Shown: piece after piece, positions 8,309 to 44,350 of the stretch
Numbering within the stretch: the stretch's first letter is position 1
Layout of the letters: each line of letters starts with the position of its first letter
IMG/VR virus record: IMGVR_UViG_3300017917_002374
Span: 290,960 to 354,959 of that record
DNA: 64,000 bases
Direction: 5' to 3' (one strand)
Made by a program: the position numbers and the translations under genes
Notes under the pieces: generated by a model
Databases searched by the model: none
Told to the model about the DNA's origin: nothing
What the model saw: only the letters and a program-made list of their open reading frames with translations

Positions 8309-8339
8309 TCACGGTAAATATGAAAATAGGATACAACAA

Positions 8340-8540: not shown

Positions 8541-8549
8541 GGAAAAACC

Positions 8550-11500: not shown

Positions 11501-12539
11501 GGCTCTCAACGACAATCTCAACGACTGCTATGCCAAGTGCGTGAGCATACAGGGCAATGTGCTGGCAGTGTCACACCACAACAGCGGTAATGGTGTCACA
11601 GTGATCAGCAAGCTGGACACCAGTGGCAATGTAAAATGGCAGCGCAGAACCTACAGCATTGACGACAGTTCAGTGGTGGTAGATACCAATGGCGATATCT
11701 ATGCCGTGGTTGAAGCCAACTTTGAAAATAAATTTAACGATGTGGCCAAGGTTATTCGTTTCAACAGTGTGGGCGAAGTGATCTGGCGCAAGTTCATTGG
11801 ACATCTGTCATATGAATACGGCGCAGCCAGCCTGAGATTCAAGAACGGTCGCAACCTAACTCTGGATGCAGATCACCTGTACATTTCAGGCTACACCTAT
11901 GCTCAGGCAGACAACTATCGTAACGGTGTCGTGATAAAGATTCCCAAGAGCGGAGATTTTGACGGCTACTACGGCAACTGGGCCTTGCAGCAGGAAAATT
12001 ATGATGTGGACCGTGTGTACTCCACAGAAGCTACCACATTCACTCCAGTGATTGGTACAGGTAACTTTGAAAACTGGTCACCAGATTTTGAAACACAATG
12101 GTGGGATCCTAGCAACGACGACTACTATCATACACTGTGGGAAATTGCAGATCGTGATGGCGGTGCTATTGAATTTGCCGACGGCACACGACAGACTCGT
12201 AGTGCTCAGATGATTCCGCAGAAGCGTATTGACAATGGCCTGGATCACAGACTCACACTAGAAGACATGGGCGGCCACATCTACTTTACCAATGTCAGCG
12301 GCAGTGTTGTGCATGTGCCCTATAACAATGACAATCCCTTGCCCATTGGTTTTACCGTGGTAATCGTAAACAACAGCGGCGGTACAGTAAACATTGATGC
12401 AGATGGCGGCGGGATTGACATCATTGTGCCAGGTCAAAGCACAGCACAGTATTGGGACCTTGAGAATTATGGCATGGCCACACTGTTAAAAGTAGCCAAC
12501 GATATCTGGTTTCTAACTGGCAATGTAACGGAAGATTAA
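8550..12539 (+). CDS. tail fibre/adhesin with Mtd_N/hyaluronidase-N-like head and beta-propeller repeats
   Basis: RIKFRRDTAANW...GEPGFEQDTNKLKIGDG; repeated K.DSSG...W.K/R blades; 1329 aa. Confidence 0.75.
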   Translation: MTTRIKFRRDTAANWTAENPVLALGEPGFEQDTNKLKIGDGETAWSGLDYASGGSDSLTSDHNIAITVGNTEYFAIVNRTNPDGDNGVDASAVAYDSEGNLITLHVSETYNTVTDDNIDQLIISKFSSTGATLWQKEIDQDIDPDTVHDVAIDADDNIIVAASVDNGEDSDSIVLIKMNSSGTVLWQKNYQGGADTFLEVGAIAINGDHVFVSGYYNDDTIAGDDSGYLMKVLVSNGSMIWAKSFDTGASFTKMFGMDVGADGHPVMVGTGGTVGPNGAAVIKLSGTNGDVLWGATLFDSENLDIEYNGGDVVVDSQNNVYVSVNTYQDIVHDDGNNTGVTIAYVSKINSSGTRQWTRRIGPGPCASVATGIDCDDSGNVYLSALTVAQKNPNREANNYYDTAINVLAMAKYSTAGAVLWQRYIECDGYWFDASSDETGAPPGFYNNGLNRGRNLSLGPNGKLAVQVSVRKKDADDNVWDSNYNESVTFQIDQDGREMTVGSGSEKFAVKASRIPGKFIAPDYTLADLEANPLPISSVTNDITVTTSAVTFSDGILAQQVAKSAPYEYVFGNDGTLTIPNDGDLKLVQTQLGWISIFGPIKNNDDNIDIRASVVDPADGSVYAVGESDDYSTGFLTRYNSAGQLLWSIRFSDNTDGYNNRANAVRIHPVSGNVMVLLEYYGSYDYTLIVEVDPDTAKVVNSFGIRDLGDSGDALAYDFAFTSSANVAIVGRKWDEWRQQSVTPLVSSTTDFLVFNASDIQGDAITNSFYVSGTGIEGRYNVAQVNRHEGLTGNTSGSGSSFVFGIYKNSSDSTNYNQSSYFITTAGNNYQINDTITVLGTELYGNTPANDLTVTVTNVDGSGGVTAIDLAGTQQNSTINVWTNGLGVNFGGVGSWTIDNNLSGEAYVLSANTAANATVSWSKLLSAGSNNDTERYFSVVVGADNSIYAAGEMISRHDAAGGDLNSYWCAVISKFDSAGNHQWTKALNDNLNDCYAKCVSIQGNVLAVSHHNSGNGVTVISKLDTSGNVKWQRRTYSIDDSSVVVDTNGDIYAVVEANFENKFNDVAKVIRFNSVGEVIWRKFIGHLSYEYGAASLRFKNGRNLTLDADHLYISGYTYAQADNYRNGVVIKIPKSGDFDGYYGNWALQQENYDVDRVYSTEATTFTPVIGTGNFENWSPDFETQWWDPSNDDYYHTLWEIADRDGGAIEFADGTRQTRSAQMIPQKRIDNGLDHRLTLEDMGGHIYFTNVSGSVVHVPYNNDNPLPIGFTVVIVNNSGGTVNIDADGGGIDIIVPGQSTAQYWDLENYGMATLLKVANDIWFLTGNVTED

Positions 12540-12542
12540 ACC

Positions 12543-15002
12543 ATGCCAATCACACAGGTCCTACTAACTTCAACTGTCACAGCGGCTCCACCTCCACCTC
12601 CTCCGCCCACACCTGATGGGCAGTACTACAGTGATGAAACACTGTTGACCTGGGGCAGTGTGGGAGTGGGACAAAACAAGCCCTCATACAATTCCAGTTA
12701 CAGCTATCCAGACAATACAACTGTTGCACCAATTTGGGATTTCAATGGCACCAACCAGTATATGACCACTCAGGTGACCAATGGATACACACAGATATAC
12801 ATGAACCTGTGGTTCTATCCCACTGCTGCTGGTCGTGTTATTATGACCATACAAGGGTCATTGGTAGAAGACTCAGGATATACTCACTCAGCACTGGAGA
12901 TAGCTGCCAACCAAACTGTGATTGGTGCTTTCTGGGCCGGCATGAATCTAGTGAGTGTTAACACAGCCAACTCAGTCACACTCAATGCCTGGAATCATAT
13001 CTATTTTAGACAGAATGCCAATGAGATACTGTTACAGTTAAACGGCGGCACAGCGGTCACGGCCAACAACACTTGGTCGTTGCCCACGCCTGCAATGGTA
13101 ATAGGTATTGGAACTACCTCATCAATGAACAGTGGATACAGTGCGAGATTTGAAGGCAGCCTGGCAGAGTTCCGCATGAACTCAACCAACACGCCCAGCA
13201 ACTACACTTTCACTAGAACCAAGTATGAAGCACCGCAGCAGGTTATCTATGATGACTTTACCATTGAGTGGTGGCAGAAAGCAGAATCCATTGGTGTGAA
13301 TACTCGTCCCTGGGCCATTGGCTTGTTGGGATCCGCATCTGGTCAGGTAGTATCAATCAGTTATGAAGGCAACGGTCGTGACTATTTCTGGATCAACGAC
13401 AGCTTCCCTGCTCAACTGGCAGACAGACCTGTGAAGAATCACTATGGCATTGGTTGGGAACACATGGCCATAGTGCGCAAAGACAATGTGATTAAACTGT
13501 ACAGCAATGGTACCAGTTATCTGACCTGGGCAGGCGGCGGACAAGCCATAACAGCAACCAACGCAGACCTAGTGGTAGGCACAGGTGAGATACCCAACGG
13601 CAACTTCCAAGGTTGGATCAAAGACCTGCACATCATCAAAGGCTACGCAAAATATAATGCCAACTTCTCAGTGCCAGTATTGCCCGTACAACCACAGACT
13701 GGTACTGTGTTCCTCCTGCCAGCCATGAGTTCTGGCACAGCATTTGATGATGTTGTAAGTTACAAGGCGGCTATACTGAGCAATACACCAACTTACAGTG
13801 AAGATGATCCATTTACATATCCAGGTGCTACATTCACTGCTATAGGATATGGTAATAATCTCATAACACCGGCGTCAACGCCACCTAATTTACGAGTTGG
13901 TCTCCTAGTCAGCGATGGAGCAGGGTGGAGCGACTATATCATTGATCCAAATTATTTTGGTAACCTACAGTTTTCAAGCCTACCAGCAAGCACACCGCCT
14001 GAACTTGTATACACTGTGTCTGAAGACTTAACCAGTGTCACACAAGGTACCAATACCTACGGTGGCAGTGGTCCTAATTGGAATGTAGACTACAGCAGTA
14101 CCAACTTCAATGTGGAACTGTTAAAAGTAAGAGTGGGCTGGACAGTGGCCTATGGTGAAGATATACTAGGCACAGTGACTGGCAATGCATATCTTATTAC
14201 ACCAGAAGTTATCAGAATAGGTGTAGATTTTGATCCTGGTACAGCAGGCGGTTTGACATTTACATATCTGCCTCCTACATATGGTGGTAGCATACGCTTT
14301 GACGCAGGTGACCGTATCAACTATGGCAGCAGTGTGGACTGGGCCTTTGACATAGACGCCATTACCACAGGCAACATCACACTGAATCTAGATGCCAATG
14401 ACATCAGCAGCTATACCGGCAGTGGTAGCACCTGGACTGATCTGTCAGGCAACAACAATGCCACCTTGATTGGCACTCCCTACTGGGACAACGGACCTCC
14501 GGCCTACTTTGAATTCAACGGTATCAATCAGTATGCCACTGTGCCTGGCACCAATATTGTGCCTGCTGCGGCCTATACCAAAATGGTATGGTTCCGTATC
14601 AACACATTCTCAGCAGACAACAACCTGATCAGCAGCGACAATGGTGGACACTTCATGTATTTCAATCAGACCACCACACTGTATGCTGGTCACAGCAATG
14701 TGTTCCCCTACAATGCGTTTGGTTCGGCCACAACCTTTAGCACCAACACCTGGTACTGTGCCACAGTCACATTCAGTGTGGCCAATGGTATCAAACTGTA
14801 TGTGAATGGTGTGTTAGACGCCAGCGACCCCAGCTACCAAACTCCACACAATCAAAACGGCAATACCAACATTGCCTGCTTTGGTATAGGTGGAAATCTG
14901 TTGAATGGTCGTATTGGACGCCTGATGTGCTATGGTAAAGAACTCACTGCACAGGAAGTGTTGAACAACTTCAACGCCACAAGAAATCGCTATGGTGTTT
15001 GA
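12543..15002 (+). CDS. LamG/concanavalin A-like lectin-domain virion protein
   Basis: N-terminal polyPro; repeated FNG..Y, W.H, LYVNG and G.IG...Y LamG motifs. Confidence 0.75.
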   Translation: MPITQVLLTSTVTAAPPPPPPPTPDGQYYSDETLLTWGSVGVGQNKPSYNSSYSYPDNTTVAPIWDFNGTNQYMTTQVTNGYTQIYMNLWFYPTAAGRVIMTIQGSLVEDSGYTHSALEIAANQTVIGAFWAGMNLVSVNTANSVTLNAWNHIYFRQNANEILLQLNGGTAVTANNTWSLPTPAMVIGIGTTSSMNSGYSARFEGSLAEFRMNSTNTPSNYTFTRTKYEAPQQVIYDDFTIEWWQKAESIGVNTRPWAIGLLGSASGQVVSISYEGNGRDYFWINDSFPAQLADRPVKNHYGIGWEHMAIVRKDNVIKLYSNGTSYLTWAGGGQAITATNADLVVGTGEIPNGNFQGWIKDLHIIKGYAKYNANFSVPVLPVQPQTGTVFLLPAMSSGTAFDDVVSYKAAILSNTPTYSEDDPFTYPGATFTAIGYGNNLITPASTPPNLRVGLLVSDGAGWSDYIIDPNYFGNLQFSSLPASTPPELVYTVSEDLTSVTQGTNTYGGSGPNWNVDYSSTNFNVELLKVRVGWTVAYGEDILGTVTGNAYLITPEVIRIGVDFDPGTAGGLTFTYLPPTYGGSIRFDAGDRINYGSSVDWAFDIDAITTGNITLNLDANDISSYTGSGSTWTDLSGNNNATLIGTPYWDNGPPAYFEFNGINQYATVPGTNIVPAAAYTKMVWFRINTFSADNNLISSDNGGHFMYFNQTTTLYAGHSNVFPYNAFGSATTFSTNTWYCATVTFSVANGIKLYVNGVLDASDPSYQTPHNQNGNTNIACFGIGGNLLNGRIGRLMCYGKELTAQEVLNNFNATRNRYGV

Positions 15003-15463
15003 TGTTTACACTCAGTCAAGTTGAAGTAGACCCTGGAGTGGCAGCGCAGGTTGTTGCTCTGTTTCAACAGCTGGATCGTGGACGCGGTGGTCCAATGGGC
15101 ACCTGGCACGGCCAGCGACTGCGTGACAATCCTTACCCATGGTTTCAATCCACCTTTGATCGTGTTACAGCGGCTCTGAGCCATCTGCGCATAGATGAAT
15201 GGTGGTTCAACTGTGGCCAGGCAGGCGACGAATATCGTTGGCACGAGCATGTGCCCTATCCTTGGGCTGCTGTGCTGTATGTTCAAACGCCAGAAAACTC
15301 TGGAGGCATAGAATTTCGCCGCCAGGAGGAGTATGCTGCATTTCAACCAGTAGCAGGTGATTTTCTGTTGTTTTCGGGTAATCTTGCTCACAGGGTTTTG
15401 CCCAATAAAAGTGCAGATTATAGAATAAGTGTGGCGTTCAACTTAACCTCCAGATCTAAATAA
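15002..15463 (+). CDS. 2OG-Fe(II) oxygenase (TIGR02466-like)
   Basis: WHEH, AAVLYV, GDFLLFSGNLAHRV, RISVAFN. Confidence 0.75.
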   Translation: MFTLSQVEVDPGVAAQVVALFQQLDRGRGGPMGTWHGQRLRDNPYPWFQSTFDRVTAALSHLRIDEWWFNCGQAGDEYRWHEHVPYPWAAVLYVQTPENSGGIEFRRQEEYAAFQPVAGDFLLFSGNLAHRVLPNKSADYRISVAFNLTSRSK

Positions 15464-15487
15464 ATAACATAATAATAGGTTAAAAAT

Positions 15488-18400
15488 ATGGCCAAGCAGA
15501 TACAATTACGTAGAGGAACCACACTAGAGCATAGCACATTTGTTGGTGCTGTAGGAGAAGTCACTGTAGATACCACAAAAGATGTAGTGGTAGTGCATGA
15601 TGGAATTACCAGTGGAGGCGTTCCTGGAGCAAGAGAGCAAGACATTTCAGCAGCAAATGCTGCTATTGCCACACTTACAGCAAACGTTGGGCTACTACGG
15701 GTTGACGTTAATGCTCTAGATCCGGGCGGCGCAGCAGCAGCCCAGGCACAGCTTAGAGCCAACATCACAGCAGCTAATGTAAAAATTTCCAATCTAGAAA
15801 GTAATGCTGTTGTACAAGCTGTACAAATTGCTGGATTGACAACGGACTTGGCCGGCGCCAATTCGTCTATAACCAGTTTGCAGATCTCGTTGGGCATTAC
15901 CAATAGTACTCTGGTACAATTACAAAATTCTGATACTGCGGTCAATGCAGCTATTGTGAGTCTAGAAACATTTGCATATTCAAATGCAGCCACACAGAAT
16001 TCTTTGATTAATGACCTAAGAGCCAACATCACAGCAGCCAATGCAGCCATACTGGTGAATACCGATCGTGTGACAGCAGCCAATATAGAAATTGCTGCGC
16101 TGAGAGCCAACATCACAGCAGCTAATGCTGAAATCACAAATCTTTACAGTAATGCATCTACACAATCCACACAGATTTCTAGCATCAACTCAAATGTGGC
16201 CGCAGCTAATGTTGGCATTGCACTAGGAGTCAGTAGAAGTATTGCAGCCAATGTTGAAATTGAAGCATTAAGAGGCAACATCACTGCGGCCAATGTACAG
16301 ATCGCTATTAATACCAATAGATCCATGGCAGCAAATATTGAAATTGGAAATTTAAGAGCCAATATAACTGCGGCCAATGCAGCCATAACCTCAGCTAACA
16401 CCTACAACATCAATTTAACCAACAGTACCTACACCACCTTGTTGGGTGGAGCAGATAGTAATTTTAACACCTTGAACAAACTGGCCAATGCGGTGGCTGG
16501 CGATCCTGCATACAGCAGCACAGTAAATGCTACCTTTGACAGTATTAGAGCAAACATCACTGCGGCCAATGCAGCCATACTGGTGAATACTAATCGGGTA
16601 ATAGCGGCCAACGCAGCAATTGTTCTAACGCAACAAGGTGTGGACGGTGCTAATACTCGTGTGGCAGCAGCCAATGTGCTGAACGCAGTAACCAATGCTA
16701 ATTTAACTGCGGCCAACGCACAGATAACCAATATCAGAAACGTGGTATCCAGTAATGGAAATGTCTACACCAGTAATGCAGTGATTGGTAATTTGTATCT
16801 AGACGATCACTTTTTTGCCAACGGCGCACAGTTTATTGCTAACTCAACCAATTGGCTGTATGTGGTTGAATCTCCTGATGATAGTGTAGCATACAACATA
16901 CCTTATATTGGTTCAGATCTTAACAGTACAGCAGTATCAGATTCATACAAACAGTTTTACAGTGATACAAACACACTAACATTTAACCCAGGACTGAATC
17001 TTTTATTATCTCCTAACATTAGCACTACCTCAAATGCGCAGGCCACATCAACTACCACTGGTGCTCTGAGAATCACCGGTGGAGCAAGCATTGCAATTGG
17101 TAATCTTTATATTGGTGGTAGTGCAGGAAGAAGTATCACAGCCACAGGTAATATTGTAGTAACTGGTGATGCCTCAACTGCGGCCAACACTGGTGCACTG
17201 GTAGTTGCTGGCGGTGTTGGGGTATCCGGTAATGTGAATATTGGTACATCGCTAGGATTGATCGGTGCAGGCGACCAAGCGTTCCGTATGGGACTAAACA
17301 GCCAAGGACAGTTGGAATTTGTTCCAAATCAAGTGGCCAGTGTGTCCGGCGGTGTTCCGGTACTGATCATTGATGACGATGGTGGTGCAATTTGGGCAAA
17401 CATTGCATTTGTAAGCAATTCAAATCTTTCAGTTACAGCCAGTACCGTGAGCTCTTCAAGTTCAACTGGTGCATTGCGAGTAACAGGCGGTGCTGGTATT
17501 GGCGGTTCATTGCATGCCGCAGGAAACATTGTGAGCGAAGCAACCACAGCAAGCACAGACGTTAGTACAGGTGCACTGATTGTTGCTGGTGGTGCTGGCA
17601 TTGGCGGAGCAATCAACATAGGCGGTATAGGAAAAATTACAGGCAATTTGGTAGCTGCTTCAACTACCAATAGCACCTCTACAACCACAGGTGCTCTAGT
17701 AGTAGCAGGCGGAGTAGGCATAGCCAACAGTGTGATTACCGGCGGCAATATAGTAGCCGCATCTGGAACAGAAAGCACAAACACAACCACAGGCGCCGTG
17801 GTAGTCACAGGCGGTGTGGGAATAGCAAACAGATTGAATGTTGGCGGAAACATTGTGGCATTGGCCACAACCACAAGCACAAACACAACCACAGGCGCCC
17901 TGGTAGTTGCAGGAGGTGTGGGTATTGGCGGAACAGTGGTTGCAGGCGGAAATATTGTGGCATCGGCTGCCACAGCCAGTGTGAATACTACTACAGGCGC
18001 ATTGGTAGTCACTGGGGGTGCGGGTATTGGTGGAGCCTTGCAAGTTGGTGGCAACGCAGTATTAGGCAGTGGCACTGCAACTTCTAGCACAACCACAGGA
18101 GCACTAGTAGTCACTGGTGGTATAGGACTCAGTGGTAACATTGTTGCTGGAGGCGGCATTGAAATTGCTGGAAACATTCTGTCAACTGCAGGACAAATTA
18201 GAGTTAGCACCGGAACAGAAAGTACCAGTACTAGTACAGGTGCACTGGTAGTTACGGGTGGTGCTGGTATTAGCGATAGATTAAATGTTGGCGGCAATGT
18301 GGTTATCACCAGTAGTGCAACCAGTACAGATACAACCACAGGAGCATTAGTAGTTGCTGGAGGAGTGGGTATTGGTGGCAATCTAGTGGTTGCTGGCAAT

Positions 18401-19633
18401 CTCAGTGTAGGTGGAGGCAGTTTGTCCAGCTTTGTTGCTGGCATGGACATGGTCAACTCTGCAGACAGTACCAGCGGTCATTATGTAAAACTGGCTACTA
18501 TTCCAGTTATGCAAGCAGCAGATGTTGCTGAAGTGGTAATCAGCTGTTTGGTTACTGGTAGATATCTACCAGCAATAGAAGCATATCGTGTGCTGGTACG
18601 AGCAGTTGGATCCAGTGCAACAGGTGCAGTTCCACAACTGTATGTGGAATCTTTATTAAACAATCAAACAAAGACAACTTTTAATGCTAGCGATTTTGTT
18701 TTAAGTTATAACGCCAGTACTTACGCAGCCTACGATTTATACTATCAGTTCAATGATGCAAATCAAAGATTATTTGCCAAATTTGATCTAGTCACCAGCG
18801 AGGACACAACCTATACTGGCAATTATTGGCAACTGTTAAGTGGTCAGACTACTTCTGCTTCGTTTACCAGTCTTGGAACCACATTGTCCGGTATTGAAAT
18901 GGGCAAGAGTGTAAGTAACCTCATTGTAAGTTACAGTGCCAGTGTTACTTCGGCCAACACATCAACATCTACCAGCACAGGTGCACTGGTAGTCACAGGT
19001 GGTGTAGGCATTGGTGATCGGTTGAATGTTGGCGGCAATGTGGTATTAACCAGCGGAACATCTAGTGCTAGTACTGTTACTGGTGCGCTAGTGGTGTCTG
19101 GCGGAATTGGAGCGTCTGGTAATATCATTGTTGCAGGCAATATTATCAGTCAAAGCACTTTTACCACACAGATAGCCGCAGGAGCCACTGCCACTCGTCC
19201 TGGCGCTCCAGCGGTTGGTATGATACGATACAATACCACATTGCAAAGTTACGAAGGGTATGGTGCCGGGGCAGCTTGGTCCAGTCTTGGAGGAGTTAAG
19301 TCAGTTTCTGGAAACGCTTATATCAGTGCAGAATTGTCAGCTGCCAGCGGCGACGATGTGTTAAGATTCTATTCAGGCAGTGCTGGCCCTAGTCAGCAGG
19401 TTGCTTATATGAGCGCCAGCAACGTTGGTATTATTATTAACACAGCAGCAACTAGTACCAGTACTGGAGCACTACAGGTTTCAGGTGGTATTGGTTTAGC
19501 AGGAAACTTATTTTCAGGTGGTAATGTGTATGTTCGTTCTAGAATTGGATTTACTTTTGGTGCAAACGCAACTAGTGCAGTTTATCAACAGTATAATCAG
19601 GCCACAAACAGTCTTGACACAATCTTTGGATAA
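15488..19633 (+). CDS. long tail fibre: Mtd_N-like head, LRANITAANA coiled-coil repeats, TGALVVxGGxG repeats
   Basis: QIQLRRGTT...GEVTVDTTKDVVVVHDG; internal repeats; GMIRYNT motif; 1381 aa. Confidence 0.8.
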   Translation: MAKQIQLRRGTTLEHSTFVGAVGEVTVDTTKDVVVVHDGITSGGVPGAREQDISAANAAIATLTANVGLLRVDVNALDPGGAAAAQAQLRANITAANVKISNLESNAVVQAVQIAGLTTDLAGANSSITSLQISLGITNSTLVQLQNSDTAVNAAIVSLETFAYSNAATQNSLINDLRANITAANAAILVNTDRVTAANIEIAALRANITAANAEITNLYSNASTQSTQISSINSNVAAANVGIALGVSRSIAANVEIEALRGNITAANVQIAINTNRSMAANIEIGNLRANITAANAAITSANTYNINLTNSTYTTLLGGADSNFNTLNKLANAVAGDPAYSSTVNATFDSIRANITAANAAILVNTNRVIAANAAIVLTQQGVDGANTRVAAANVLNAVTNANLTAANAQITNIRNVVSSNGNVYTSNAVIGNLYLDDHFFANGAQFIANSTNWLYVVESPDDSVAYNIPYIGSDLNSTAVSDSYKQFYSDTNTLTFNPGLNLLLSPNISTTSNAQATSTTTGALRITGGASIAIGNLYIGGSAGRSITATGNIVVTGDASTAANTGALVVAGGVGVSGNVNIGTSLGLIGAGDQAFRMGLNSQGQLEFVPNQVASVSGGVPVLIIDDDGGAIWANIAFVSNSNLSVTASTVSSSSSTGALRVTGGAGIGGSLHAAGNIVSEATTASTDVSTGALIVAGGAGIGGAINIGGIGKITGNLVAASTTNSTSTTTGALVVAGGVGIANSVITGGNIVAASGTESTNTTTGAVVVTGGVGIANRLNVGGNIVALATTTSTNTTTGALVVAGGVGIGGTVVAGGNIVASAATASVNTTTGALVVTGGAGIGGALQVGGNAVLGSGTATSSTTTGALVVTGGIGLSGNIVAGGGIEIAGNILSTAGQIRVSTGTESTSTSTGALVVTGGAGISDRLNVGGNVVITSSATSTDTTTGALVVAGGVGIGGNLVVAGNLSVGGGSLSSFVAGMDMVNSADSTSGHYVKLATIPVMQAADVAEVVISCLVTGRYLPAIEAYRVLVRAVGSSATGAVPQLYVESLLNNQTKTTFNASDFVLSYNASTYAAYDLYYQFNDANQRLFAKFDLVTSEDTTYTGNYWQLLSGQTTSASFTSLGTTLSGIEMGKSVSNLIVSYSASVTSANTSTSTSTGALVVTGGVGIGDRLNVGGNVVLTSGTSSASTVTGALVVSGGIGASGNIIVAGNIISQSTFTTQIAAGATATRPGAPAVGMIRYNTTLQSYEGYGAGAAWSSLGGVKSVSGNAYISAELSAASGDDVLRFYSGSAGPSQQVAYMSASNVGIIINTAATSTSTGALQVSGGIGLAGNLFSGGNVYVRSRIGFTFGANATSAVYQQYNQATNSLDTIFG

Positions 19634-24022: not shown

Positions 24023-24433
24023 ATGGAATTCGCTATAAAATCTCGTAGCAAAAAAAGCAAGATGCTAGTGGAAGCCATTTTGCCTTCTATTATTAAACAG
24101 TTAAAGTTAACAAAAAGTAAAAAGTTTTTGCTGGTGGAAATCAGCAAGGACGTGGGCGACAACAATGACGGCTGTACTGTTCCGTTGCCTGGTATAGATT
24201 CCATAGTGGTCACAGTGAAACCTGCACCACTGCATCTTTTGGGCATTACACTAGCACATGAAATGGTGCACGTAAAACAGTTGGCCAAAGGAATTCTACG
24301 AGCAGAAAACGGTGTGAAATATTGGCGCGGCAAACGCTATTCCAGTAGGACCAAGTATCTAAACTGTCCTTGGGAACTTGAAGCCTTTGCCCAGCAAGAA
24401 ATTTTATTTAGACGAGCAATAGAGAGGTTATAA
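24023..24433 (+). CDS. HExxH zinc metallopeptidase-like protein
   Basis: TLAHEMVHVKQ and PWELEA motifs. Confidence 0.7.
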   Translation: MEFAIKSRSKKSKMLVEAILPSIIKQLKLTKSKKFLLVEISKDVGDNNDGCTVPLPGIDSIVVTVKPAPLHLLGITLAHEMVHVKQLAKGILRAENGVKYWRGKRYSSRTKYLNCPWELEAFAQQEILFRRAIERL

Positions 24434-25035
24434 TGCCAGCAGTATTTTTAGTTAGTGACACACACTTTGGACATATGGGCGTGTGCCGGTTCATGCGCAA
24501 CGACGGCGTAACCAAATTGCGCCCTTACACCACTCCAGAGGAGATGGATGAAGACATGATTGCCAAGTGGAACGATCGTGTGCGTCCAAACGACAAGGTG
24601 TACCATTTGGGCGACGTTGTGATCAATCGCAGAGCATTGCCTACCTTGGCTCGTTTGAACGGCGACAAAGTATTGATTCGTGGTAATCACGATATCTTTC
24701 GGGACGACGAGTACCGACAATACTTTCGTGAATTGCGAGCTTACCATGTGATGAACGGAATGATTTTGAGCCACATTCCCATTCACGAGGATTCGTTGGG
24801 ACGGTTTGGTGTAAACATTCACGGACACTTGCATGCCAACCGTGTGATGAAGCGAGCCAGCAGCCTTATGGAGTTCGTGAAGCGTGGCAAACGAGAATGG
24901 ATTGATCCTCGCTATCATTGCGTGTGCGTGGAGCAAACAGACTTTGCACCTATTTTGTTTGAAGACGTTATCAAACGCATTGAAGCAGAAGGCGGCACAG
25001 TGGGTTTCAAAAATGGCAACGGTCCAATAATGTAG
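24433..25035 (+). CDS. calcineurin-like metallophosphoesterase
   Basis: SDTHFGH, LGD, GNHD, SHIP, HGHLH motifs; ends in TAG. Confidence 0.9.
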   Translation: MPAVFLVSDTHFGHMGVCRFMRNDGVTKLRPYTTPEEMDEDMIAKWNDRVRPNDKVYHLGDVVINRRALPTLARLNGDKVLIRGNHDIFRDDEYRQYFRELRAYHVMNGMILSHIPIHEDSLGRFGVNIHGHLHANRVMKRASSLMEFVKRGKREWIDPRYHCVCVEQTDFAPILFEDVIKRIEAEGGTVGFKNGNGPIM

Positions 25036-25064
25036 TTGACAGGTCTGCAATTTGTAAATATAAT
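25036..25064 (+). promoter_or_regulatory. consensus sigma70 promoter
   Basis: TTGACA-17 nt-TATAAT; SD AAGGAG before 25085. Confidence 0.85.
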
Positions 25065-25084
25065 GTGAAAATTAAGGAGAACAC

Positions 25085-25762
25085 ATGAGCCTTTCTTTGG
25101 AAAACACCATTCAACTTTCGTCCACTGGTGTACAAAACTTTTTTAGAGACATTTTCATGCGCATGACAGCAGCACTCACAATCAGTGCTGTTACGGCTGG
25201 ACTGGCCAGTATGTTACCGTTTCTTTACACAGGCGGTATTCTGACCTGGTTGATTATTCTCAGCCCGCTGGCTTTTGTTTTGGCTATGAGTTTTGGCAGT
25301 GAACGTTTTAGTACTAATACCTTGATCATGCTGTTCTTGGGTTTTGCTGTTGCACAAGGCCTAAGCATGGGAAGTATATTTTTGGTTTATACAGGTGCTA
25401 GTATTTTCACAGCATTTTTAATGGCCGCAGTGACTTTTGGCAGCTTTGCACTAATTGGTTACACAACCAAACGAGATCTTACCAGCATGGGCACGTTCCT
25501 GTTTGTGGGGTTGATTGGAATCATCATAGCCAGTGTGGTAAATATTTGGCTTGCGCTGCCCGTGTTGGCACAAGTTATCAATGTGTTGGCAGTGATCATC
25601 TTTGTAGGACTCACTGCATATGATGTGCAGAAGTTAAAAGAAATTTATTACAGTGGAACAGATGATGGTAAAATTCGTACACTAGGTGCCTTGACATTGT
25701 ATCTGGATTTTATTAACATCTTTATGGCGCTGCTGCAATTGATTGGCGGCAAGCGAGAATAA
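25085..25762 (+). CDS. Bax inhibitor-1/YccA family membrane protein
   Basis: About 7 hydrophobic segments; GYTTKRDLT, TAYDVQKLK, LYLDFINIF motifs. Confidence 0.9.
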   Translation: MSLSLENTIQLSSTGVQNFFRDIFMRMTAALTISAVTAGLASMLPFLYTGGILTWLIILSPLAFVLAMSFGSERFSTNTLIMLFLGFAVAQGLSMGSIFLVYTGASIFTAFLMAAVTFGSFALIGYTTKRDLTSMGTFLFVGLIGIIIASVVNIWLALPVLAQVINVLAVIIFVGLTAYDVQKLKEIYYSGTDDGKIRTLGALTLYLDFINIFMALLQLIGGKRE

Positions 25763-25767
25763 ACAGA

Positions 25768-25841
25768 CGCGGGATAGAGAAACGGTAACTCAGGAGTCTC
25801 ATAAGCTCCAGGTCCAGGTTCGATTCCTGGTCCCGCAACCA
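25768..25841 (+). tRNA. tRNA-Met(CAT), initiator-like but atypical
   Basis: C1:A72 mismatch, A11-U24, loop CTCATAA; anticodon stem GGAGT/GCTCC lacks the three G-C pairs. Confidence 0.85.
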
Positions 25842-25856
25842 AACAAAAGGAATAGT

Positions 25857-26021
25857 ATGCAAAATCAAGAATATGTGCCTGGCACATGCGGCTGCGGTCG
25901 TAGCCCAACCGGTAATTGTATTGGTTGGCATGGTCTAAGTGAAGATGAATTTAGACAAGCCCTGGCAGAATATGAAGTAAAACTTTTGGAACAAAGGAAA
26001 AATGATGCAAGTAACAGCTAG
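25857..26021 (+). CDS. CDGSH-like iron-sulfur/zinc-finger small protein
   Basis: CGCGRSPTGNCIGWH resembles C-x-C-x2-S-x3-P-x-C-D-G-S-H; SD AGGA before ATG 25857; ends in TAG. Confidence 0.65.
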   Translation: MQNQEYVPGTCGCGRSPTGNCIGWHGLSEDEFRQALAEYEVKLLEQRKNDASNS

Positions 26022-26274
26022 ACATATTTTGGTTTCAGATCTAAACACTGCTCTGACTATCAAGGCCAAAATCACAGAAGGCACTCAATTTGGCGATTTA
26101 GCTAGAGCACACAGTTCATGTCCTAGTAGAGCACGTGACGGTGACCTTGGATCATTTGGTCCAGGCATGATGGTGAAACCATTTGAAGACGCTGCATTCG
26201 CTCTTGATGTTGGGCAGATTAGCGAACCTGTACAAACACAGTTTGGCTGGCATTTGATTCAAAGAACAGGTTGA
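26002..26274 (+). CDS. ppiC: parvulin-type peptidyl-prolyl cis-trans isomerase
   Basis: ARHILV, FGDLARAHSSCPS...GDLG.F..G.MV.PFE.AAF.L..GQIS.PV.TQFGWHLI. Confidence 0.92.
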   Translation: MMQVTARHILVSDLNTALTIKAKITEGTQFGDLARAHSSCPSRARDGDLGSFGPGMMVKPFEDAAFALDVGQISEPVQTQFGWHLIQRTG

Positions 26275-27188: not shown

Positions 27189-27264
27189 GCGGGCGTAGCT
27201 CAGTTGGTAGAGCATCTGCCTTCCAAGCAGAATGTCGTCAGTTCGAACCTGATCGCCCGCTCCA
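27189..27264 (+). tRNA. tRNA-Gly(TCC)
   Basis: GCGGGCG/CGCCCGC acceptor, loop CTTCCAA, TCCA end. Confidence 0.96.
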
Positions 27265-27265
27265 T

Positions 27266-27339
27266 GCACTAGAAGCTGATCGGATAGCTGAAGCCTCTAA
27301 AACTTCTGGTAGTGGGTTCGACTCCCACCTGGTGCACCA
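27266..27339 (+). tRNA. amber suppressor tRNA (anticodon CTA)
   Basis: Acceptor GCACTAG/CTGGTGC plus ACCA; D-arm GCT/AGC; anticodon stem GAAGC/ACTTC (31:39 C-A mismatch) with loop CT-CTA-AA; T-arm GTGGG-TTCGACT-CCCAC. Confidence 0.85.
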
Positions 27340-27340
27340 A

Positions 27341-27485
27341 ATTCTCCGTCGTTCCTAACTGACGTAAAACGTTTGGCGAAGTTGGTCAGCTGCGTGAAGA
27401 AATGACTCGGGGTTAACAGTGTCCGTAATGATTGTTCGGCAGGTGGAGTCGTTAGGCTTTGTTGAAGTTGAGGATAACCAAGGTC
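27341..27485 (+). ncRNA. candidate structured RNA or leader between the suppressor tRNA and the amber-containing gene
   Basis: Stems AATGACTC/GAGTCGTT, AACAGT/ATTGTT, CTGAC/GTCAG; alternative pairing CCTAAC/GTTAGG. Confidence 0.4.
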
Positions 27486-27509
27486 ATACATTTTTAAAAG
27501 GAAAAAGAA

Positions 27510-28094
27510 ATGTCATAGATTGAATTAGGCTGTAGAGATGTAGTGTTTCACTTTAATAAAAAACACTTGCAAGATCCTTCTGTTCCCATGTGGATCTTAA
27601 AGACTGGTGGTAAAACCTACTATGTTGAACATGTGGACTGTCAAAGCCCTTGGAGCACCAAGGAAACGCCTGATAATAGCCATACCAAAGGCAGTATCAA
27701 AATCAAAGATTGTTTGTTGATCATAGACGAACACAATCAGGCATCAATAAGACCCTTAACTATAGATGACAAATTCCGTCTGCACAATCAGCAGAAGGGT
27801 ATCACACGAGTGATTGTTAAAGAAGGTCGCGACGCATTTGATCTGCGCCGATACATAAGAGATCTAGAAATAAAACATGGACCTATCAAGAGTATTGGCG
27901 GAGCATGTAGCAGTACCTTTTACATCACAGACATCATGGTACCTAGCCATTTTACTGCACTAGGGTTGGCTATGGCAGGAACCACTTTCAGAGAACTCAT
28001 GCCCAACGAGCACTATTATCGTATCTATGATTCAGGAAAAGATGCACCAGCTGATCATTTATGGGAAGAACACTTTGAAGATCAAATAGATTGA
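27510..28094 (+). CDS. hypothetical protein with in-frame TAG at codon 3 (ORF track starts it at GTG 27543)
   Basis: SD AAGGA 7 nt before ATG 27510; ATG TCA TAG ATT GAA TTA GGC TGT AGA GAT GTA GTG continues in frame into the 183-aa ORF. Confidence 0.75.
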
Positions 28095-42895: not shown

Positions 42896-44350
42896 ATGTT
42901 TGCAAAACTATTAATCAAAGATGAAGTCAATGTCAAAATAGAAGGACTAGAACTTCGTGATAGAAAAGCCCTGGTAGACAAATACAAATACGAAATACCA
43001 GGTGCTAGATATTTGCCCGCTGTTCGTCTTGGACGGTGGGACGGCAAGGTCAGCTACTTTCAACTGGGTGGCAGCACGTACATCAATCTCTTACCAGAAG
43101 TATTGGAGTACCTGGACAAGCAGGGATATGATATTGAACTGGTAGACACGCGAGACTATCGTACACATTTTGAATTCACGCCTGTAAACGAAAACAGTTA
43201 CAATCATATTGCCTGGCCCAAAGGACATCCCAAAGCTGGTGAGCCCATGGTGTTGAGAGATTATCAGCCCGAGATCATCAACAGATTCTTTGAGAATCCA
43301 CAGAGTGTACAAGAAGTAGCCACTGGTGCAGGTAAGACTGTGATCACTGCTGCACTGTCAGATGCAGTATCGCAATATGGTAGAAGTATTGTGATAGTGC
43401 CCAACAAGAGTCTAGTTACACAAACAGAACAAGACTTTGTTAACATGCAACTAGATGTAGGTGTGTATTTTGGAGATCGCAAGGAATTTGGACGCACACA
43501 CACCATATGCACCTGGCAAAGCCTAAACATCTTGCTCAAGAATACCAAGAACCACGAAGCAGATATTACCATAGGCGAGTTTCTTGAAGGTGTGGTATGT
43601 GTGATTGTGGATGAGGTACACATGGCCAAAGCAGATGCACTCAAGACTCTACTCACGGGTGTAATGGCCGAGATACCCATCCGCTGGGGACTCACAGGAA
43701 CCATTCCCAAAGAAGATTATGAACGTATGTCACTCAAGTGCAGCATAGGCGACGTGGTTGGTAATCTAAAAGCAGCAGAACTGCAAGAAGCCGGACATCT
43801 TGCACAGTGTCATGTGAACATTGTGCAGCTGGTTGATCATGTGGAATACAACAACTATCAAAGCGAGTTAAAATATTTGTTGGAGACTGACGGTCGCTTG
43901 GACTATATAAGTAGATTGGTAGAAACAATTAGAGCCAACGGCAACACTCTTATCTTGGTTGATCGTGTGGCTGCAGGACAAGCTCTAGTATCAAGAATTC
44001 AAGATGCAGTATTTGTAAGCGGTGCTACCAAAGCCAAGGACAGGAAATCAGAGTACGATGAAATTGCAACAAGTGATGGCAAGGTTATTGTGGCGACTTA
44101 TGGTGTGGCCGCTGTGGGCATTAATATTCCTAGGATTTTTAATCTGGTTCTTCTGGAGCCCGGAAAGAGCTTTGTCAGAGTTATACAATCTATTGGACGA
44201 GGTATTAGGAAAGCAGAAGACAAAGACTTCGTACAAATCTGGGACATAACCAGCACATGCAAATTTGCCAAACGGCATCTAACAAAAAGAAAAGCCTTCT
44301 ACAAAGAAGCCAATTACCCGTTCGCGGTAGAGAAAGCAGAGTGGCAATGA
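42896..44350 (+). CDS. uvsW: UvsW-like SF2 DNA helicase
   Basis: LRDYQ, ATGAGKT, DEVH, GLTGT, ATYGVAAVGINIP, QSIGRGIR. Confidence 0.88.
   Translation: MFAKLLIKDEVNVKIEGLELRDRKALVDKYKYEIPGARYLPAVRLGRWDGKVSYFQLGGSTYINLLPEVLEYLDKQGYDIELVDTRDYRTHFEFTPVNENSYNHIAWPKGHPKAGEPMVLRDYQPEIINRFFENPQSVQEVATGAGKTVITAALSDAVSQYGRSIVIVPNKSLVTQTEQDFVNMQLDVGVYFGDRKEFGRTHTICTWQSLNILLKNTKNHEADITIGEFLEGVVCVIVDEVHMAKADALKTLLTGVMAEIPIRWGLTGTIPKEDYERMSLKCSIGDVVGNLKAAELQEAGHLAQCHVNIVQLVDHVEYNNYQSELKYLLETDGRLDYISRLVETIRANGNTLILVDRVAAGQALVSRIQDAVFVSGATKAKDRKSEYDEIATSDGKVIVATYGVAAVGINIPRIFNLVLLEPGKSFVRVIQSIGRGIRKAEDKDFVQIWDITSTCKFAKRHLTKRKAFYKEANYPFAVEKAEWQ

What the first reader, a model, noticed from the sequence alone, without database searches (positions are those of the whole stretch)
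27266..27339. Identity of the CUA tRNA: probably charged with Lys (or Arg), not a tRNA-Pyl
It has G1-C72, discriminator A73, a D-loop with G18-G19-A20, a 5-nt variable loop and a C31:A39 mismatch. In E. coli amber-suppressor studies, U35 with A73 favours LysRS, U35 with G73 favours GlnRS, and A20 is an ArgRS determinant. It lacks the tRNA-Pyl hallmarks (G73, 3-nt variable loop, 6-bp anticodon stem). The TCT (Arg) register does not form a stem. The predicted product would start MSKIEL or MSRIEL.
Basis: partly seen in the sequence, partly recalled or inferred. Interest (0 to 1): 0.6.

Follow-up and report, generated by a model that had tools for sequence, protein, structure and literature searches.

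The report
Phage amber tRNA gates neighbouring gene
A freshwater jumbo phage that otherwise uses the standard genetic code carries a real stop-codon-reading (UAG) tRNA whose conserved client is the UAG at codon 3 of the gene next door, an arrangement repeated in hundreds of related phages; which amino acid it inserts cannot be read from the sequence (lysine is a reasonable guess) and probably does not matter.

Summary
The tRNA at 27266-27339 is real: ARAGORN reads anticodon CUA, Rfam tRNA scores 50 bits, and 17 of 19 stem pairs covary in 40 homologues. It is not tRNA-Pyl.

That single A aligns as A21, and position 20 varies in relatives.

The genome is a complete 355-kb jumbo phage with 30 other tRNAs. 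It uses the standard code and has no release factor and none of the three synthetase families I scanned for.

The main result is comparative. The gene 171 nt downstream begins SD-ATG-TCA-TAG-ATT-GAA. The same layout (ATG, 1-9 codons, TAG, never TAA or TGA) heads 85 of 97 distinct homologues. In 11 of the other 12, an inserted upstream PTH2-like peptidyl-tRNA hydrolase gene carries it instead. At least 85 of the 97 have a tRNA-CUA upstream on the same strand.

So the tRNA and the UAG form a dedicated pair, a translational gate.

The inserted residue is unresolved. Lys is the best guess from E. coli precedent (U35, A73, C34, weak 31:39 pair). Gln comes second and Arg is unlikely. Homologues that start directly after the TAG position show the leader is dispensable, so the residue is probably immaterial.

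I found no description of such a gate in the papers I searched.

The parts
27189..27264 (+). tRNA-Gly(UCC), last ordinary tRNA of the cluster; it ends 1 nt before the tRNA-CUA (tandem, presumably one precursor transcript)
   Evidence: ARAGORN; Rfam 72.2 bits
27266..27339 (+). tRNA with anticodon CUA (amber suppressor), class I. G1-C72, A73, encoded CCA, C31.A39 closing mismatch, loop CU-CUA-AA
   Evidence: Covariation in 40 homologues
27297..27299 (+). anticodon CTA (positions 32-34 of the gene)
   Evidence: ARAGORN; sequence
27340..27497 (+). spacer between the tRNA and the gated gene. No terminator-like site on the + strand, so co-transcription is likely but inferred
27498..27502 (+). Shine-Dalgarno-like AAGGA, 7 nt upstream of the ATG
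   Evidence: sequence. The same placement (AAGGAG or AAAGGA, 6-9 nt before the ATG) is seen in the relatives
27510..27518 (+). gate: ATG TCA TAG, with the in-frame amber codon at 27516-27518 as codon 3, followed by ATT GAA
   Evidence: Conserved in 85 of 97 distinct homologous genes
27510..28094 (+). gated gene: 194 codons plus stop, product M-S-x-I-E-L-G-C-R-D-V-V-F-H-F-N-K...; no Pfam, PHROG or NCBIfam family
   Evidence: 1728 relatives in the protein collection
27519..27758 (+). N-terminal 'FHFNK' beta domain (residues 4-83), the part shared with Rhizobium phage RHph_I1_18, Atu_ph07 and Phosso. The confident model has no PDB fold match
27798..28034 (+). C-terminal ferredoxin-like (ACT/RRM-like, beta-alpha-beta-beta-alpha) domain, found only in the long form of the family
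   Evidence: best Z 7.5, generic

Best explanation
The gene at 27266-27339 encodes a functional class-I amber-suppressor tRNA (anticodon CUA). The phage has none of the three synthetase families I scanned for, so a host synthetase most likely charges it.

Its conserved client is one codon: the UAG at codon 3 of the gene 171 nt downstream (27510-28094). Ribosomes start at the SD-served ATG, make Met-Ser, and meet UAG. Release factor 1 then ends translation after a dipeptide, or the phage tRNA-CUA inserts a residue and the 194-residue protein is made. Output of this gene therefore depends on the amount of working tRNA-CUA relative to RF1. In related phages the same holds for a PTH2-like peptidyl-tRNA hydrolase + FHFNK two-gene unit. 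That makes it a translational gate.

Placing the UAG at codons 2-10 keeps a failed attempt cheap and leaves no truncated protein. The purine after the UAG favours suppression in E. coli work, but it is confounded with the conserved Ile codon.

The inserted residue is most likely Lys, from E. coli precedent for generic CUA tRNAs. It is probably unimportant to the protein, because the leader varies in length and can be absent.

Shown: the tRNA, the conserved UAG, the SD placement and the co-occurrence.
Inferred: decoding of this UAG by this tRNA, the gate logic, and Lys.
For: tRNA is real and under selection:
- ARAGORN and Rfam both call it.
- 17 of 19 stem pairs covary in 40 homologues.

Standard code genome-wide:
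- TAG ends about 33 of 370 ORFs, with no excess of TAG-split ORFs.
- Only one SD-ATG-x-TAG-ORF exists in the 355-kb genome.

The gate:
- tblastn and alignments start at residue 4-7, upstream of the first standard start, GTG at codon 12.
- Invariant Cys8 and strand 1 of a pLDDT-94 model lie there.
- A strong SD lies 6-9 nt before the ATG in all loci.
- 85 of 97 distinct homologues have ATG + 1-9 codons + TAG.
- In 11 of the 12 others, the adjacent upstream PTH2-like gene (PF01981, 37.9 bits) carries ATG-x-TAG instead.
- An independent Logan contig behaved as predicted.
- All 102 gates use TAG, never TAA or TGA, while neighbouring codons vary freely.
- The next base is A in 93 of 102 gates, against 6 of 33 terminal TAGs (Fisher p 3e-15).

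Co-occurrence with tRNA-CUA:
- ARAGORN finds one in 65 of 97.
- At least 85 of 97 have one after adding calls ARAGORN missed and tRNAs 3-12 kb upstream.
- 73 of 73 found by my own scan are upstream on the same strand, median about 0.7 kb.
- The same pair occurs in the cultured Rhizobium phage RHph_I1_18, where the gene was left unannotated.

Leader dispensable: homologues start M-I-E directly (L022, L028, P0062).

Host charging: no PF00152, PF00749 or PF01409 in the genome.

Lys precedent: PMC1483225 reports that CUA suppressors are mis-lysylated in E. coli, that a weak 31-39 pair favours LysRS, that C31-G39 shifts acceptance towards GlnRS, and that C34 raises Lys acceptance about 30-fold. The family's 31:39 pair is non-Watson-Crick in 55 of 65, and A73 is present in 56 of 65.
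Against: - There is no direct evidence of aminoacylation or readthrough. No RNA or proteome data were found (one search lists DNA runs only).
- Twelve of the 97 loci show no tRNA-CUA. Five of these have under 1 kb of upstream sequence and one has no gate.
- XacN1 and Xoo-sp13 carry family-like tRNA-CUA genes but no FHFNK homologue and no gated PTH2, so the tRNA can exist without this client.
- Genes ending in TAG show no excess of back-up stops (p 0.97). The genome therefore shows no adaptation to strong general suppression, and how its own TAG stops cope is unexplained.
- Lys rests on E. coli rules, but the host is unknown (a phage-borne beta-type tmRNA hints at Betaproteobacteria).
- The phages' own tRNA-Lys are among the least similar tRNAs (0.64 against 0.69 for Trp, Met, Arg and Thr).
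- Discriminator and acceptor stems vary across the family: G73 in 8, U73 in 1.
Confidence: 0.75

Rival explanations
1. Same gate, but the tRNA is charged with glutamine, as assumed for TAG-recoded gut phages (code 15).
For: U35 and C34 are GlnRS anticodon determinants, and three of the misacylated E. coli CUA suppressors became Gln acceptors (own knowledge, Normanly et al. 1990). PMC1483225 shows a Lys/Gln seesaw. Eight of 65 family members have G73.
Against: The Gln identity set is largely missing. G1-C72, a strong pair, is present in 61 of 65 instead of U1-A72. A73 is present in 56 of 65. C2-G71 replaces G2-C71. C31-G39, which favours GlnRS, occurs in 1 of 65. Similarity to the phages' own tRNA-Gln is low (0.655). 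The 'Q' at this position in 117 of 120 database proteins comes from the gene caller reading TAG as Q, not from data.
Confidence: 0.2
2. The UAG is a true stop. ATG-x-TAG is a two-codon leader ORF (start-stop or minigene), and the main ORF is made by re-initiation at the next codon (AUU or AUC). The nearby tRNA-CUA is unrelated or vestigial.
For: The codon after the TAG is ATT or ATC in 71 of 87 FHFNK gates and ATT or ATA in 11 of 15 PTH2 gates. AUU is a known rare bacterial start. Short SD-driven minigenes are known regulators (lambda bar; own knowledge).
Against: A leader ORF could end in any stop, yet 102 of 102 use TAG. Post-TAG codons also include ACT, AAA, AAC, AGA and GTA, which are not start codons. 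The SD is spaced for the ATG, not for the codon 9 nt later. A rare tRNA-CUA lies upstream on the same strand in at least 85 of 97 loci. When PTH2 is inserted, the TAG moves with the first gene and the tRNA stays.
Confidence: 0.07
3. The tRNA's main job is general amber readthrough of host or phage TAG stops, for host takeover or C-terminal extensions. The gated gene is a feedback sensor or compensator: in relatives it is PTH2, and this phage also encodes a tmRNA, which would clear ribosomes that run past stops.
For: Family-like tRNA-CUA genes exist in XacN1 and Xoo-sp13 without the gated gene. The gated unit contains a peptidyl-tRNA hydrolase in relatives. G000 encodes a two-piece tmRNA (RF04321, 90.6 bits). 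One TAG|ATG in-frame junction could yield a fusion (44845).
Against: There are no extra back-up stops after TAG-terminated genes, and no enrichment of in-frame TAG junctions (3 for TAG, 21 for TAA, 4 for TGA). The XacN1 authors found nothing beyond 18 amber stops (PMC5852040). This rival is compatible with the gate reading and differs only on which role is primary.
Confidence: 0.25
4. The tRNA is an arginine acceptor (A20), or actually reads AGA through a UCU register.
For: The closest tRNAs in the same genome are Arg(UCU) and Arg(GCG), at 69% identity. ARAGORN assigns 'Arg(tct)' to some homologues whose loop reads AUUCUAAC (L056, L058, L073).
Against: C35, the major ArgRS determinant, is absent. 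'A20' is a lone A that Infernal aligns as A21, and it is not conserved. In the window's tRNA the UCU register has no stem and would put C at position 33. The conserved codon in the client genes is TAG, not AGA.
Confidence: 0.03
5. It carries pyrrolysine or another non-standard residue through a dedicated system.
For: ARAGORN's label 'tRNA-Pyl', which is given to any CUA anticodon. One codon in one gene resembles Sec/Pyl-style dedicated recoding.
Against: All Pyl structural hallmarks are absent. No class-IIc synthetase core, and no other synthetase family tested, is in the complete genome. The position of the UAG drifts between codons 2 and 10 in a dispensable leader.
Confidence: 0.02

Closest known systems
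Suppressor tRNA-CUA of TAG-recoded phages (Lak megaphages, crAss-like phages; code 15, TAG=Gln)
   Same: A phage-encoded tRNA with a CUA anticodon inside a tRNA cluster, in a phage infecting a standard-code host. Translation of phage genes depends on it, and it is proposed to time expression.
   Different: Those phages have tens to hundreds of in-frame TAGs, mostly in late genes, and often change release factors. Here the genome is standard code with one UAG, always within the first 10 codons of one conserved gene or operon. The tRNA also lacks Gln identity features.
Orphan tRNA-Sup(CUA) of standard-code jumbo phages XacN1, Xoo-sp13 and RsoM2USA
   Same: For XacN1 and Xoo-sp13, the anticodon arm is nearly identical to many family members (GAGCC-UCUAAAA-CUC with C31.A39), with an encoded CCA, G1-C72, and A or G at 73. 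The host phages are tRNA-rich and standard-code. RsoM2USA is known only from its paper, which reports a CUA suppressor; I did not examine its sequence.
   Different: The XacN1 paper states that no target gene could be identified (PMC5852040). I found no FHFNK homologue there and no TAG on its PTH2 genes. The window's phage has an identifiable, conserved client.
E. coli synthetic amber suppressors that insert lysine (tRNA bodies Arg, Asp, Ile2, Thr2, Met(m), Val with CUA; Normanly et al. 1990, own knowledge) and the LysRS/GlnRS 31-39 'seesaw' (PMC1483225)
   Same: A generic class-I body with C34-U35-A36, A73 and a weak 31-39 pair. This is the basis for predicting Lys.
   Different: Those are engineered tRNAs in E. 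coli. This is a natural, diversified family in unknown (possibly betaproteobacterial) hosts, and no charging data exist.
prfB (RF2) autoregulation and lambda bar minigenes: early in-frame stop codons used as sensors
   Same: An early stop codon after a strong SD, where competition at the A-site (release factor against an alternative event) sets the output. Di- or tripeptidyl-tRNA at such sites is prone to drop-off, which is the substrate of peptidyl-tRNA hydrolases (own knowledge). PTH2 is the gated gene in relatives.
   Different: In prfB the alternative event is a +1 frameshift at codon 26, and no tRNA is dedicated to it. Here the frame is unchanged and a dedicated suppressor tRNA is encoded beside the gene.
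tRNA-Pyl / tRNA-Sec dedicated recoding
   Same: A stop codon is read as sense in very few genes by a special tRNA.
   Different: There is no dedicated synthetase, elongation factor or mRNA element here. The tRNA has an ordinary cloverleaf, and the recoded position is not structurally fixed.

Membership tests
tRNA (Rfam RF00005), elongator class I | Cloverleaf scoring above the family threshold | tested here: met
   50.2 bits against a gathering score of 29, full-length model match 1-71. ARAGORN agrees.
tRNA (Rfam RF00005), elongator class I | Stems maintained by compensatory changes among homologues | tested here: met
   17 of 19 consensus pairs have double compensatory changes in 40 sequences.
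tRNA (Rfam RF00005), elongator class I | Short variable loop, G18-G19 and T-loop UUCRA | tested here: met
   5-nt variable loop; 3-6 nt in 65 homologues.
tRNA-Pyl | G73 discriminator | tested here: not met
   A73.
tRNA-Pyl | 3-nt variable loop, 6-bp anticodon stem, one base between the acceptor and D stems, small D-loop without G18-G19 | tested here: not met
   5-nt variable loop. Five-position anticodon stem with a mismatched closing pair. Two bases (A8, A9) between the stems. G18-G19 present.
tRNA-Pyl | A PylS-type synthetase available | tested here: not met
   No PF01409 core in the complete phage genome. The host genome is unknown.
Lys identity (E. coli LysRS rules) | U35 and A73 | tested here: met
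   U35 from the CUA anticodon. A73 here and in 56 of 65 relatives.
Lys identity (E. coli LysRS rules) | U34/C34 and U36 | tested here: inconclusive
   C34 is accepted by LysRS (PMC1483225), but A36 replaces U36.
Lys identity (E. coli LysRS rules) | Weak 31-39 pair preferred, C31-G39 disfavoured | tested here: met
   C31.A39 here. Non-Watson-Crick in 55 of 65, C-G in 1 of 65. A C.A mismatch itself was not assayed in the paper.
Lys identity (E. coli LysRS rules) | Actual lysylation | not testable with these tools
   Needs a charging assay or MS.
Gln identity (E. coli GlnRS rules) | G73, weak U1-A72, G2-C71, G3-C70 | tested here: not met
   A73, G1-C72, C2-G71 and A3-U70.
Arg identity (E. coli ArgRS rules) | C35 | tested here: not met
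   U35.
Arg identity (E. coli ArgRS rules) | A20 | tested here: inconclusive
   The single A after G19 is aligned as A21 by Infernal. Position 20 is variable in the family.
Genome-wide TAG reassignment (code 15 phages) | Many essential genes interrupted by in-frame TAG; coding density restored by reading TAG as sense | tested here: not met
   Long ORFs are intact under table 11. There are 3 TAG-joined ORF pairs against 21 for TAA. One gate exists in 355 kb.
PTH2 peptidyl-tRNA hydrolase (PF01981), for the gated gene | Match to the Pfam model | tested here: not met
   The window's gated protein has no Pfam hit, and G000 has no PF01981 match. The gated upstream gene in the L129/L138/L142/L150-type relatives does match (31-38 bits, cutoff 23).

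The most novel reading that the evidence does not exclude
The tRNA-CUA plus UAG-at-codon-3 pair is a purpose-built translational switch, widespread in freshwater jumbo phages (at least 1700 database proteins). It couples synthesis of a translation-rescue module to the working state of the phage's own tRNA supply relative to host RF1. The module is the novel-fold FHFNK protein and, in relatives, a PTH2 peptidyl-tRNA hydrolase. This would give a target and a rationale to at least one family of 'orphan' suppressor tRNAs in standard-code phages. It would also be a natural single-codon amber-gated gene circuit, the kind synthetic biologists build by hand.
Probability: 0.35. Interest if true: 0.85.

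Novelty: new variant of a known kind. Interest (0 to 1): 0.75.

Why it matters
Suppressor tRNAs have been noted in standard-code jumbo phages without any known target. The XacN1 authors say so explicitly (PMC5852040). Here a conserved client appears: a UAG within the first ten codons of one gene or operon, always TAG, and nearly always with a tRNA-CUA upstream.

Four consequences follow.
1. Annotation. Gene callers miss the gene (RHph_I1_18), truncate it, or print a conventional 'Q' that looks like data.
2. Biology. It points to a minimal natural form of stop-codon recoding: one codon acting as a gate. That could be an evolutionary stepping stone towards the genome-wide TAG recoding seen in gut phages.
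3. Function. It links an uncharacterised domain of apparently new fold to peptidyl-tRNA hydrolase and to the ribosome-rescue genes of tRNA-rich phages.
4. Testability. Rhizobium phage RHph_I1_18 and its host give a cultured system in which to test it.

Tried and rejected
- **Isotype by similarity.** I aligned 39 tRNA-CUA globally against 119 other tRNAs from the same phages. No isotype stands out: Trp, Met, Arg and Thr about 0.69, Gln 0.655, Lys 0.637. Not informative.
- **Residue from homologues without the TAG.** None keeps the leader with a sense codon. They start at M-I-E or are fusions.
- **The 'Q' in 117 of 120 database proteins.** All three I looked up translate only 'with_TAG=Q'. I rejected this as evidence for Gln.
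- **A second gate candidate at G000:168949.** It is the overlap of two glycosyltransferase-like genes with a normal internal start. Rejected.
- **Genome-wide recoding.** Rejected.
- **Back-up stops after TAG-terminated genes.** No signal.
- **Families in G000.** Release factor, Pth1, PTH2 and the LysRS/AspRS, GlnRS/GluRS and PheRS/PylS families are all absent. Other synthetase families, including ArgRS, were not scanned.
- **Function of the gated protein.**
  - Pfam, PHROGs and NCBIfam gave nothing. A PDB sequence profile search also gave nothing.
  - Foldseek and VIA-align on the whole model found only a generic ACT/RRM-like match for the C-domain (Z 7.5).
  - The N-domain modelled alone reached best Z 3.3.
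  - The ESM Atlas by features gave no usable hit. By shape it gave only viral hypothetical clusters.
- **XacN1, Xoo-sp13 and RHph PTH2 genes.** None has a TAG gate.
- **First structure job on alignment A2.** I re-ran it without that row.
- **Complex prediction (PTH2 with FHFNK).** Not run, because I make no binding claim.
- **The search of protein representatives.** Not used: the word search already gave 1728 relatives.
- **Domain search with the search for homologous proteins.** It was run on the full-length alignment only, so proteins outside roughly 105-334 aa were not candidates. The N-domain was instead searched at DNA level.
- **Genetic code.** TAG was read as X for one codon only. One call used TAG=K on a mis-set frame and was discarded. 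The genome itself uses table 11.
Full report
**1. What is at the coordinates**

ARAGORN finds eight tRNA genes in the window, the last at exactly 27266-27339 (+) with anticodon CTA. It labels this 'tRNA-Pyl', as it does any CUA anticodon. Rfam's tRNA model scores it 50.2 bits against a gathering score of 29, matching the full model.

The sequence and ARAGORN's bracket string give these features:
- acceptor stem G1-C72, C2-G71, A3-U70, C4-G69, U5.G68, A6-U67, G7-C66;
- A8 (not U8) and A9;
- a D-stem with a G13.U22 wobble and a six-base D-loop, A-U-C-G-G-A;
- anticodon stem G-C, A-U, A-U, G-C, closed by a C31.A39 mismatch;
- loop C-U-CUA-A-A;
- a five-base variable loop;
- a standard T-arm, A73 and an encoded CCA.

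Only one A follows G19, and Infernal aligns it to the near-universal A21 with position 20 deleted. In homologues the base after G19 is A, U, C or G. The UCU register cannot be folded in this tRNA.

**2. Genomic setting**

The window is the last 64 kb of a single 354,959-bp virus record with terminal repeats, rated 100% complete. GC is 0.427. The genome carries 30 other tRNAs covering all 20 amino acids. It is a jumbo phage found in freshwater and pond metagenomes from several studies.

It uses the standard code. Very long ORFs are intact under table 11. TAG terminates about 33 of 370 scored ORFs. ORF pairs joined in frame across a stop number 3 for TAG, against 21 for TAA and 4 for TGA, so TAG shows no excess.

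The genome has no RF-1 domain, no Pth1 and no PTH2. It also lacks the class-IIb (Lys/Asp/Asn), class-Ic (Glu/Gln) and class-IIc (Phe/Pyl) synthetase cores. Other synthetase families were not scanned. A host enzyme most likely charges the tRNA, and pyrrolysine is excluded as far as the phage genome goes.

**3. The downstream gene**

An AAGGA Shine-Dalgarno lies 171 nt after the tRNA. Seven nt further on comes ATG TCA TAG ATT GAA TTA..., open to 28094. The first standard start after the TAG is GTG at codon 12.

tblastn matches to Rhizobium phage RHph_I1_18, Sinorhizobium phage Phosso and Agrobacterium phage Atu_ph07 begin at residue 7. Matches to IMG/VR contigs begin at residue 4, the codon right after the TAG.

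In a 46-sequence alignment, Cys8, Val12, Phe13, His14, Phe15, Asn16 and Lys17 are invariant. In the AlphaFold models (pLDDT 85 for the whole protein, 94 for the N-domain), residues directly after the TAG form the first beta-strand. The coding region must therefore begin before the first standard start.

**4. The comparative result**

In RHph_I1_18 the homologue was left unannotated. It reads M-S-E-F-M-TAG-N-E-S-C-R-E-V-I-F-H-F-N-K..., and a tRNA-CUA lies 12 nt after its stop.

- **Gate frequency.** Two scans of IMG/VR gave 148 loci holding 97 distinct homologous genes. Of these, 85 begin ATG + 1-9 sense codons + TAG, with TAG at codon 3 in 65 of 87 gates. In every case AAGGAG or AAAGGA lies 6-9 nt before the ATG.
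- **Selection on TAG.** The codon before the TAG varies freely (GCA, TCA, TCG, AAA, CAA and others), while the TAG is fixed.
- **The exceptions.** In 11 of the 12 genes without the TAG, a PTH2-like peptidyl-tRNA hydrolase gene sits immediately upstream. That gene carries the ATG-x-TAG leader instead. I confirmed the PF01981 match (31-38 bits, cutoff 23) on three of them. One locus has the gate on both genes. The twelfth is an Atu_ph07-type fusion.
- **Independent check.** A database protein that starts M-I-E under table 11 lies on a Logan contig. The gene upstream of it begins ATG TCA TAG ATT GAA and matches the other PTH2-like genes, and a tRNA-CUA lies about 900 nt further up.
- **Stop codon and context.** All 102 gates use TAG, none TAA or TGA. 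The following base is A in 93 of 102, against 6 of 33 for the genome's terminal TAGs (Fisher p 3e-15). This context is confounded with a conserved Ile codon.
- **Uniqueness in this genome.** A scan for SD-ATG-(1-5 codons)-stop-long ORF finds only this gene, after discarding an overlap artefact.

**5. Co-occurrence with tRNA-CUA**

ARAGORN finds a tRNA-CUA in 65 of the 97 loci, 64 of them upstream on the same strand. ARAGORN also mis-registers some homologues as 'Arg(tct)' where the loop reads AUUCUAAC (L056, L058, L073). It misses others entirely: for example G001:325756-325830, about 90 nt before the gate in a 93%-complete genome.

My own scan finds 73 of 97, all upstream on the same strand, median about 0.7 kb. 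That scan requires the loop motif, a T-stem, an acceptor stem and CCA. Adding ARAGORN's CCA-less calls, and tRNAs found 3-12 kb upstream in three further contigs, gives at least 85 of 97. Of the 12 without one, five have under 1 kb of upstream sequence and one has no gate.

Contigs of related strains laid on the window show many substitutions in the gene, but none is listed at 27516-27518. This is weak evidence, because 112 further differences were not shown.

**6. The tRNA family and the amino acid**

Sixty-five unique tRNA-CUA share the following:
- G1-C72 in 61 of 65;
- A73 in 56, G73 in 8, U73 in 1;
- a class-I variable loop of 3-6 nt;
- an encoded CCA in 56;
- a loop reading mostly CUCUAAA;
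- a non-Watson-Crick 31:39 pair in 55 of 65 (C.A 28, A.C 12, U.G 11).

RNAalifold accordingly draws a 3-bp anticodon stem and a 9-nt loop. Acceptor pairs 3-7, the D-arm, position 8 and position 20 all vary. What is conserved is therefore the anticodon loop, a weak closing pair, the discriminator and the first pair.

No isotype stands out by overall similarity. By E. coli precedent, generic class-I bodies given CUA are charged mostly with Lys, and some with Gln (Normanly et al. 1990, my own knowledge). PMC1483225 shows that LysRS mis-lysylates CUA suppressors. It also shows that a weak 31-39 pair favours Lys, that C31-G39 shifts acceptance to Gln, and that C34 raises Lys acceptance about 30-fold.

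Lys is thus the best guess. I put it near 0.4, Gln near 0.2-0.25, and Arg as unlikely because there is no C35. The host is unknown, and the assignment cannot be made from sequence.

The 'Q' printed at this position in 117 of 120 database relatives comes from the gene caller reading TAG as Q. It is not evidence.

The leader's length varies, with TAG at codons 2-10, and some homologues dispense with it. The residue is therefore probably irrelevant to the protein. What is under selection is the stop codon itself.

**7. Mechanism proposed**

The pair works as a translational gate. At codon 3 the ribosome holds Met-Ser-tRNA and a UAG in the A-site. RF1 releases a dipeptide, or the phage tRNA-CUA reads through. 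Output then follows the level of processed, charged tRNA-CUA relative to RF1. No terminator separates the tRNA cluster from the gene, so they are probably co-transcribed, which is an inference.

Why these particular genes are gated is not shown. The leads are as follows:
- In relatives the gated unit contains PTH2, and PTH2 lies two genes upstream of the FHFNK homologue in Phosso and Atu_ph07.
- PTH2 in jumbo phages has been discussed as part of tRNA repair and ribosome rescue (PMC7824862).
- This phage also encodes a two-piece tmRNA (RF04321 90.6 bits, RF01850 87 bits).
- Early stop codons after strong SDs are classic sites of peptidyl-tRNA drop-off (my own knowledge).

A feedback or feed-forward link between suppression, drop-off and rescue is plausible but untested.

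The N-terminal FHFNK domain has no PDB fold match (best Z 3.3 on a pLDDT-94 model) and no family assignment. The C-terminal domain is a generic ferredoxin-like fold.

**8. Against, and limits**

- There are no expression, charging or proteomic data.
- XacN1 and Xoo-sp13 carry family-like tRNA-CUA genes but no gated gene that I could find. The tRNA may therefore have another or a broader role.
- TAG-terminated genes show no extra back-up stops.
- The re-initiation rival (AUU after a two-codon leader ORF) is not excluded. It fails to explain the exclusive use of TAG, the non-start codons after the TAG, and the linked tRNA.

**9. Novelty**

Phage suppressor tRNAs and TAG recoding are known. Orphan tRNA-CUA genes in standard-code jumbo phages have been reported with no target found (PMC5852040; PMC8504454). 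A 2026 survey links suppressor tRNAs only to alternative codes (PMC13037316).

Six full-text searches turned up no description of a conserved single-codon amber gate beside its tRNA. I rate this a new variant of a known kind.

The object is an environmental bacteriophage.

Noticed in passing
G000:C1:50297-50741 (outside the window; locus L168:298-742): The phage encodes a two-piece (permuted) tmRNA: Rfam tmRNA_permuted 90.6 bits (GA 47) and beta_tmRNA 87 bits (GA 84). ARAGORN also calls it. This hints at a betaproteobacterial host and fits a ribosome-rescue theme.
   Followed up: partly
window 44257-45192: ORF 44257-44847 ends in TAG, and the very next codon is the in-frame ATG of a Cupin_2 ORF (44848-45192). 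Amber readthrough by the phage tRNA would fuse the two. I did not test whether homologues are fused.
   Followed up: partly
L129, L137, L138, L142-144, L147, L148, L150, L151, L022, L028, L156 (upstream of the FHFNK gene): PTH2-like peptidyl-tRNA hydrolase genes that begin ATG-x-TAG. Gene callers start them late or miss them. Two sequence types exist: KLRVVTRRDL... and Y-x-Y-x-F-IRTDLP...
   Followed up: yes
65 unique tRNA-CUA genes in loci L003-L154: The 31:39 closing pair of the anticodon stem is non-Watson-Crick in 55 of 65 (C.A 28, A.C 12, U.G 11), so the loop is effectively 9 nt. Position 8 is A or G in 16 of 42. Both are unusual for tRNAs, and their role in charging or UAG decoding is unexplained.
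   Followed up: partly
L056:87-161, L058:2625-2699, L073:2884-2958; G001:C1:325756-325830: ARAGORN labels some tRNA-CUA homologues 'Arg(tct)', because of a register ambiguity in a loop reading AUUCUAAC (possibly an 8-nt loop). It misses one altogether. Counts of suppressor tRNAs from standard tools are therefore underestimates.
   Followed up: partly
protein collection, P0004-P0123: 117 of 120 listed relatives are stored with 'Q' at the TAG position, because the gene caller applied TAG=Q to short contigs. This looks like evidence for glutamine but is a convention.
   Followed up: yes
window 4031-19633: Three giant paralogous ORFs (1425, 1329 and 1381 aa) with Mtd_N (major tropism determinant N-terminal) domains. 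One has collagen repeats. A Laminin_G_3 protein lies among them. These are presumably tail fibres.
   Followed up: no
window 24433-26274: The tRNA cluster is interleaved with a metallophosphatase, a Bax1-I/YccA-like membrane protein and a parvulin-type PPIase. A metallophosphatase also flanks the FHFNK homologue in Atu_ph07 and Phosso.
   Followed up: no
G000:C1:288268-288357 (outside the window): A 90-nt tRNA-Ile(UAU) call, longer than a class-I tRNA, so it may contain an intron or an insertion.
   Followed up: no
L002 (Atu_ph07) and L001 (Phosso): In these rhizobial jumbo phages the FHFNK domain is the C-terminal third of a roughly 175-aa protein with a helical N-terminal part and no TAG. 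PTH2 lies two genes upstream. According to its paper, Atu_ph07 carries an opal (UCA) suppressor tRNA rather than an amber one.
   Followed up: partly
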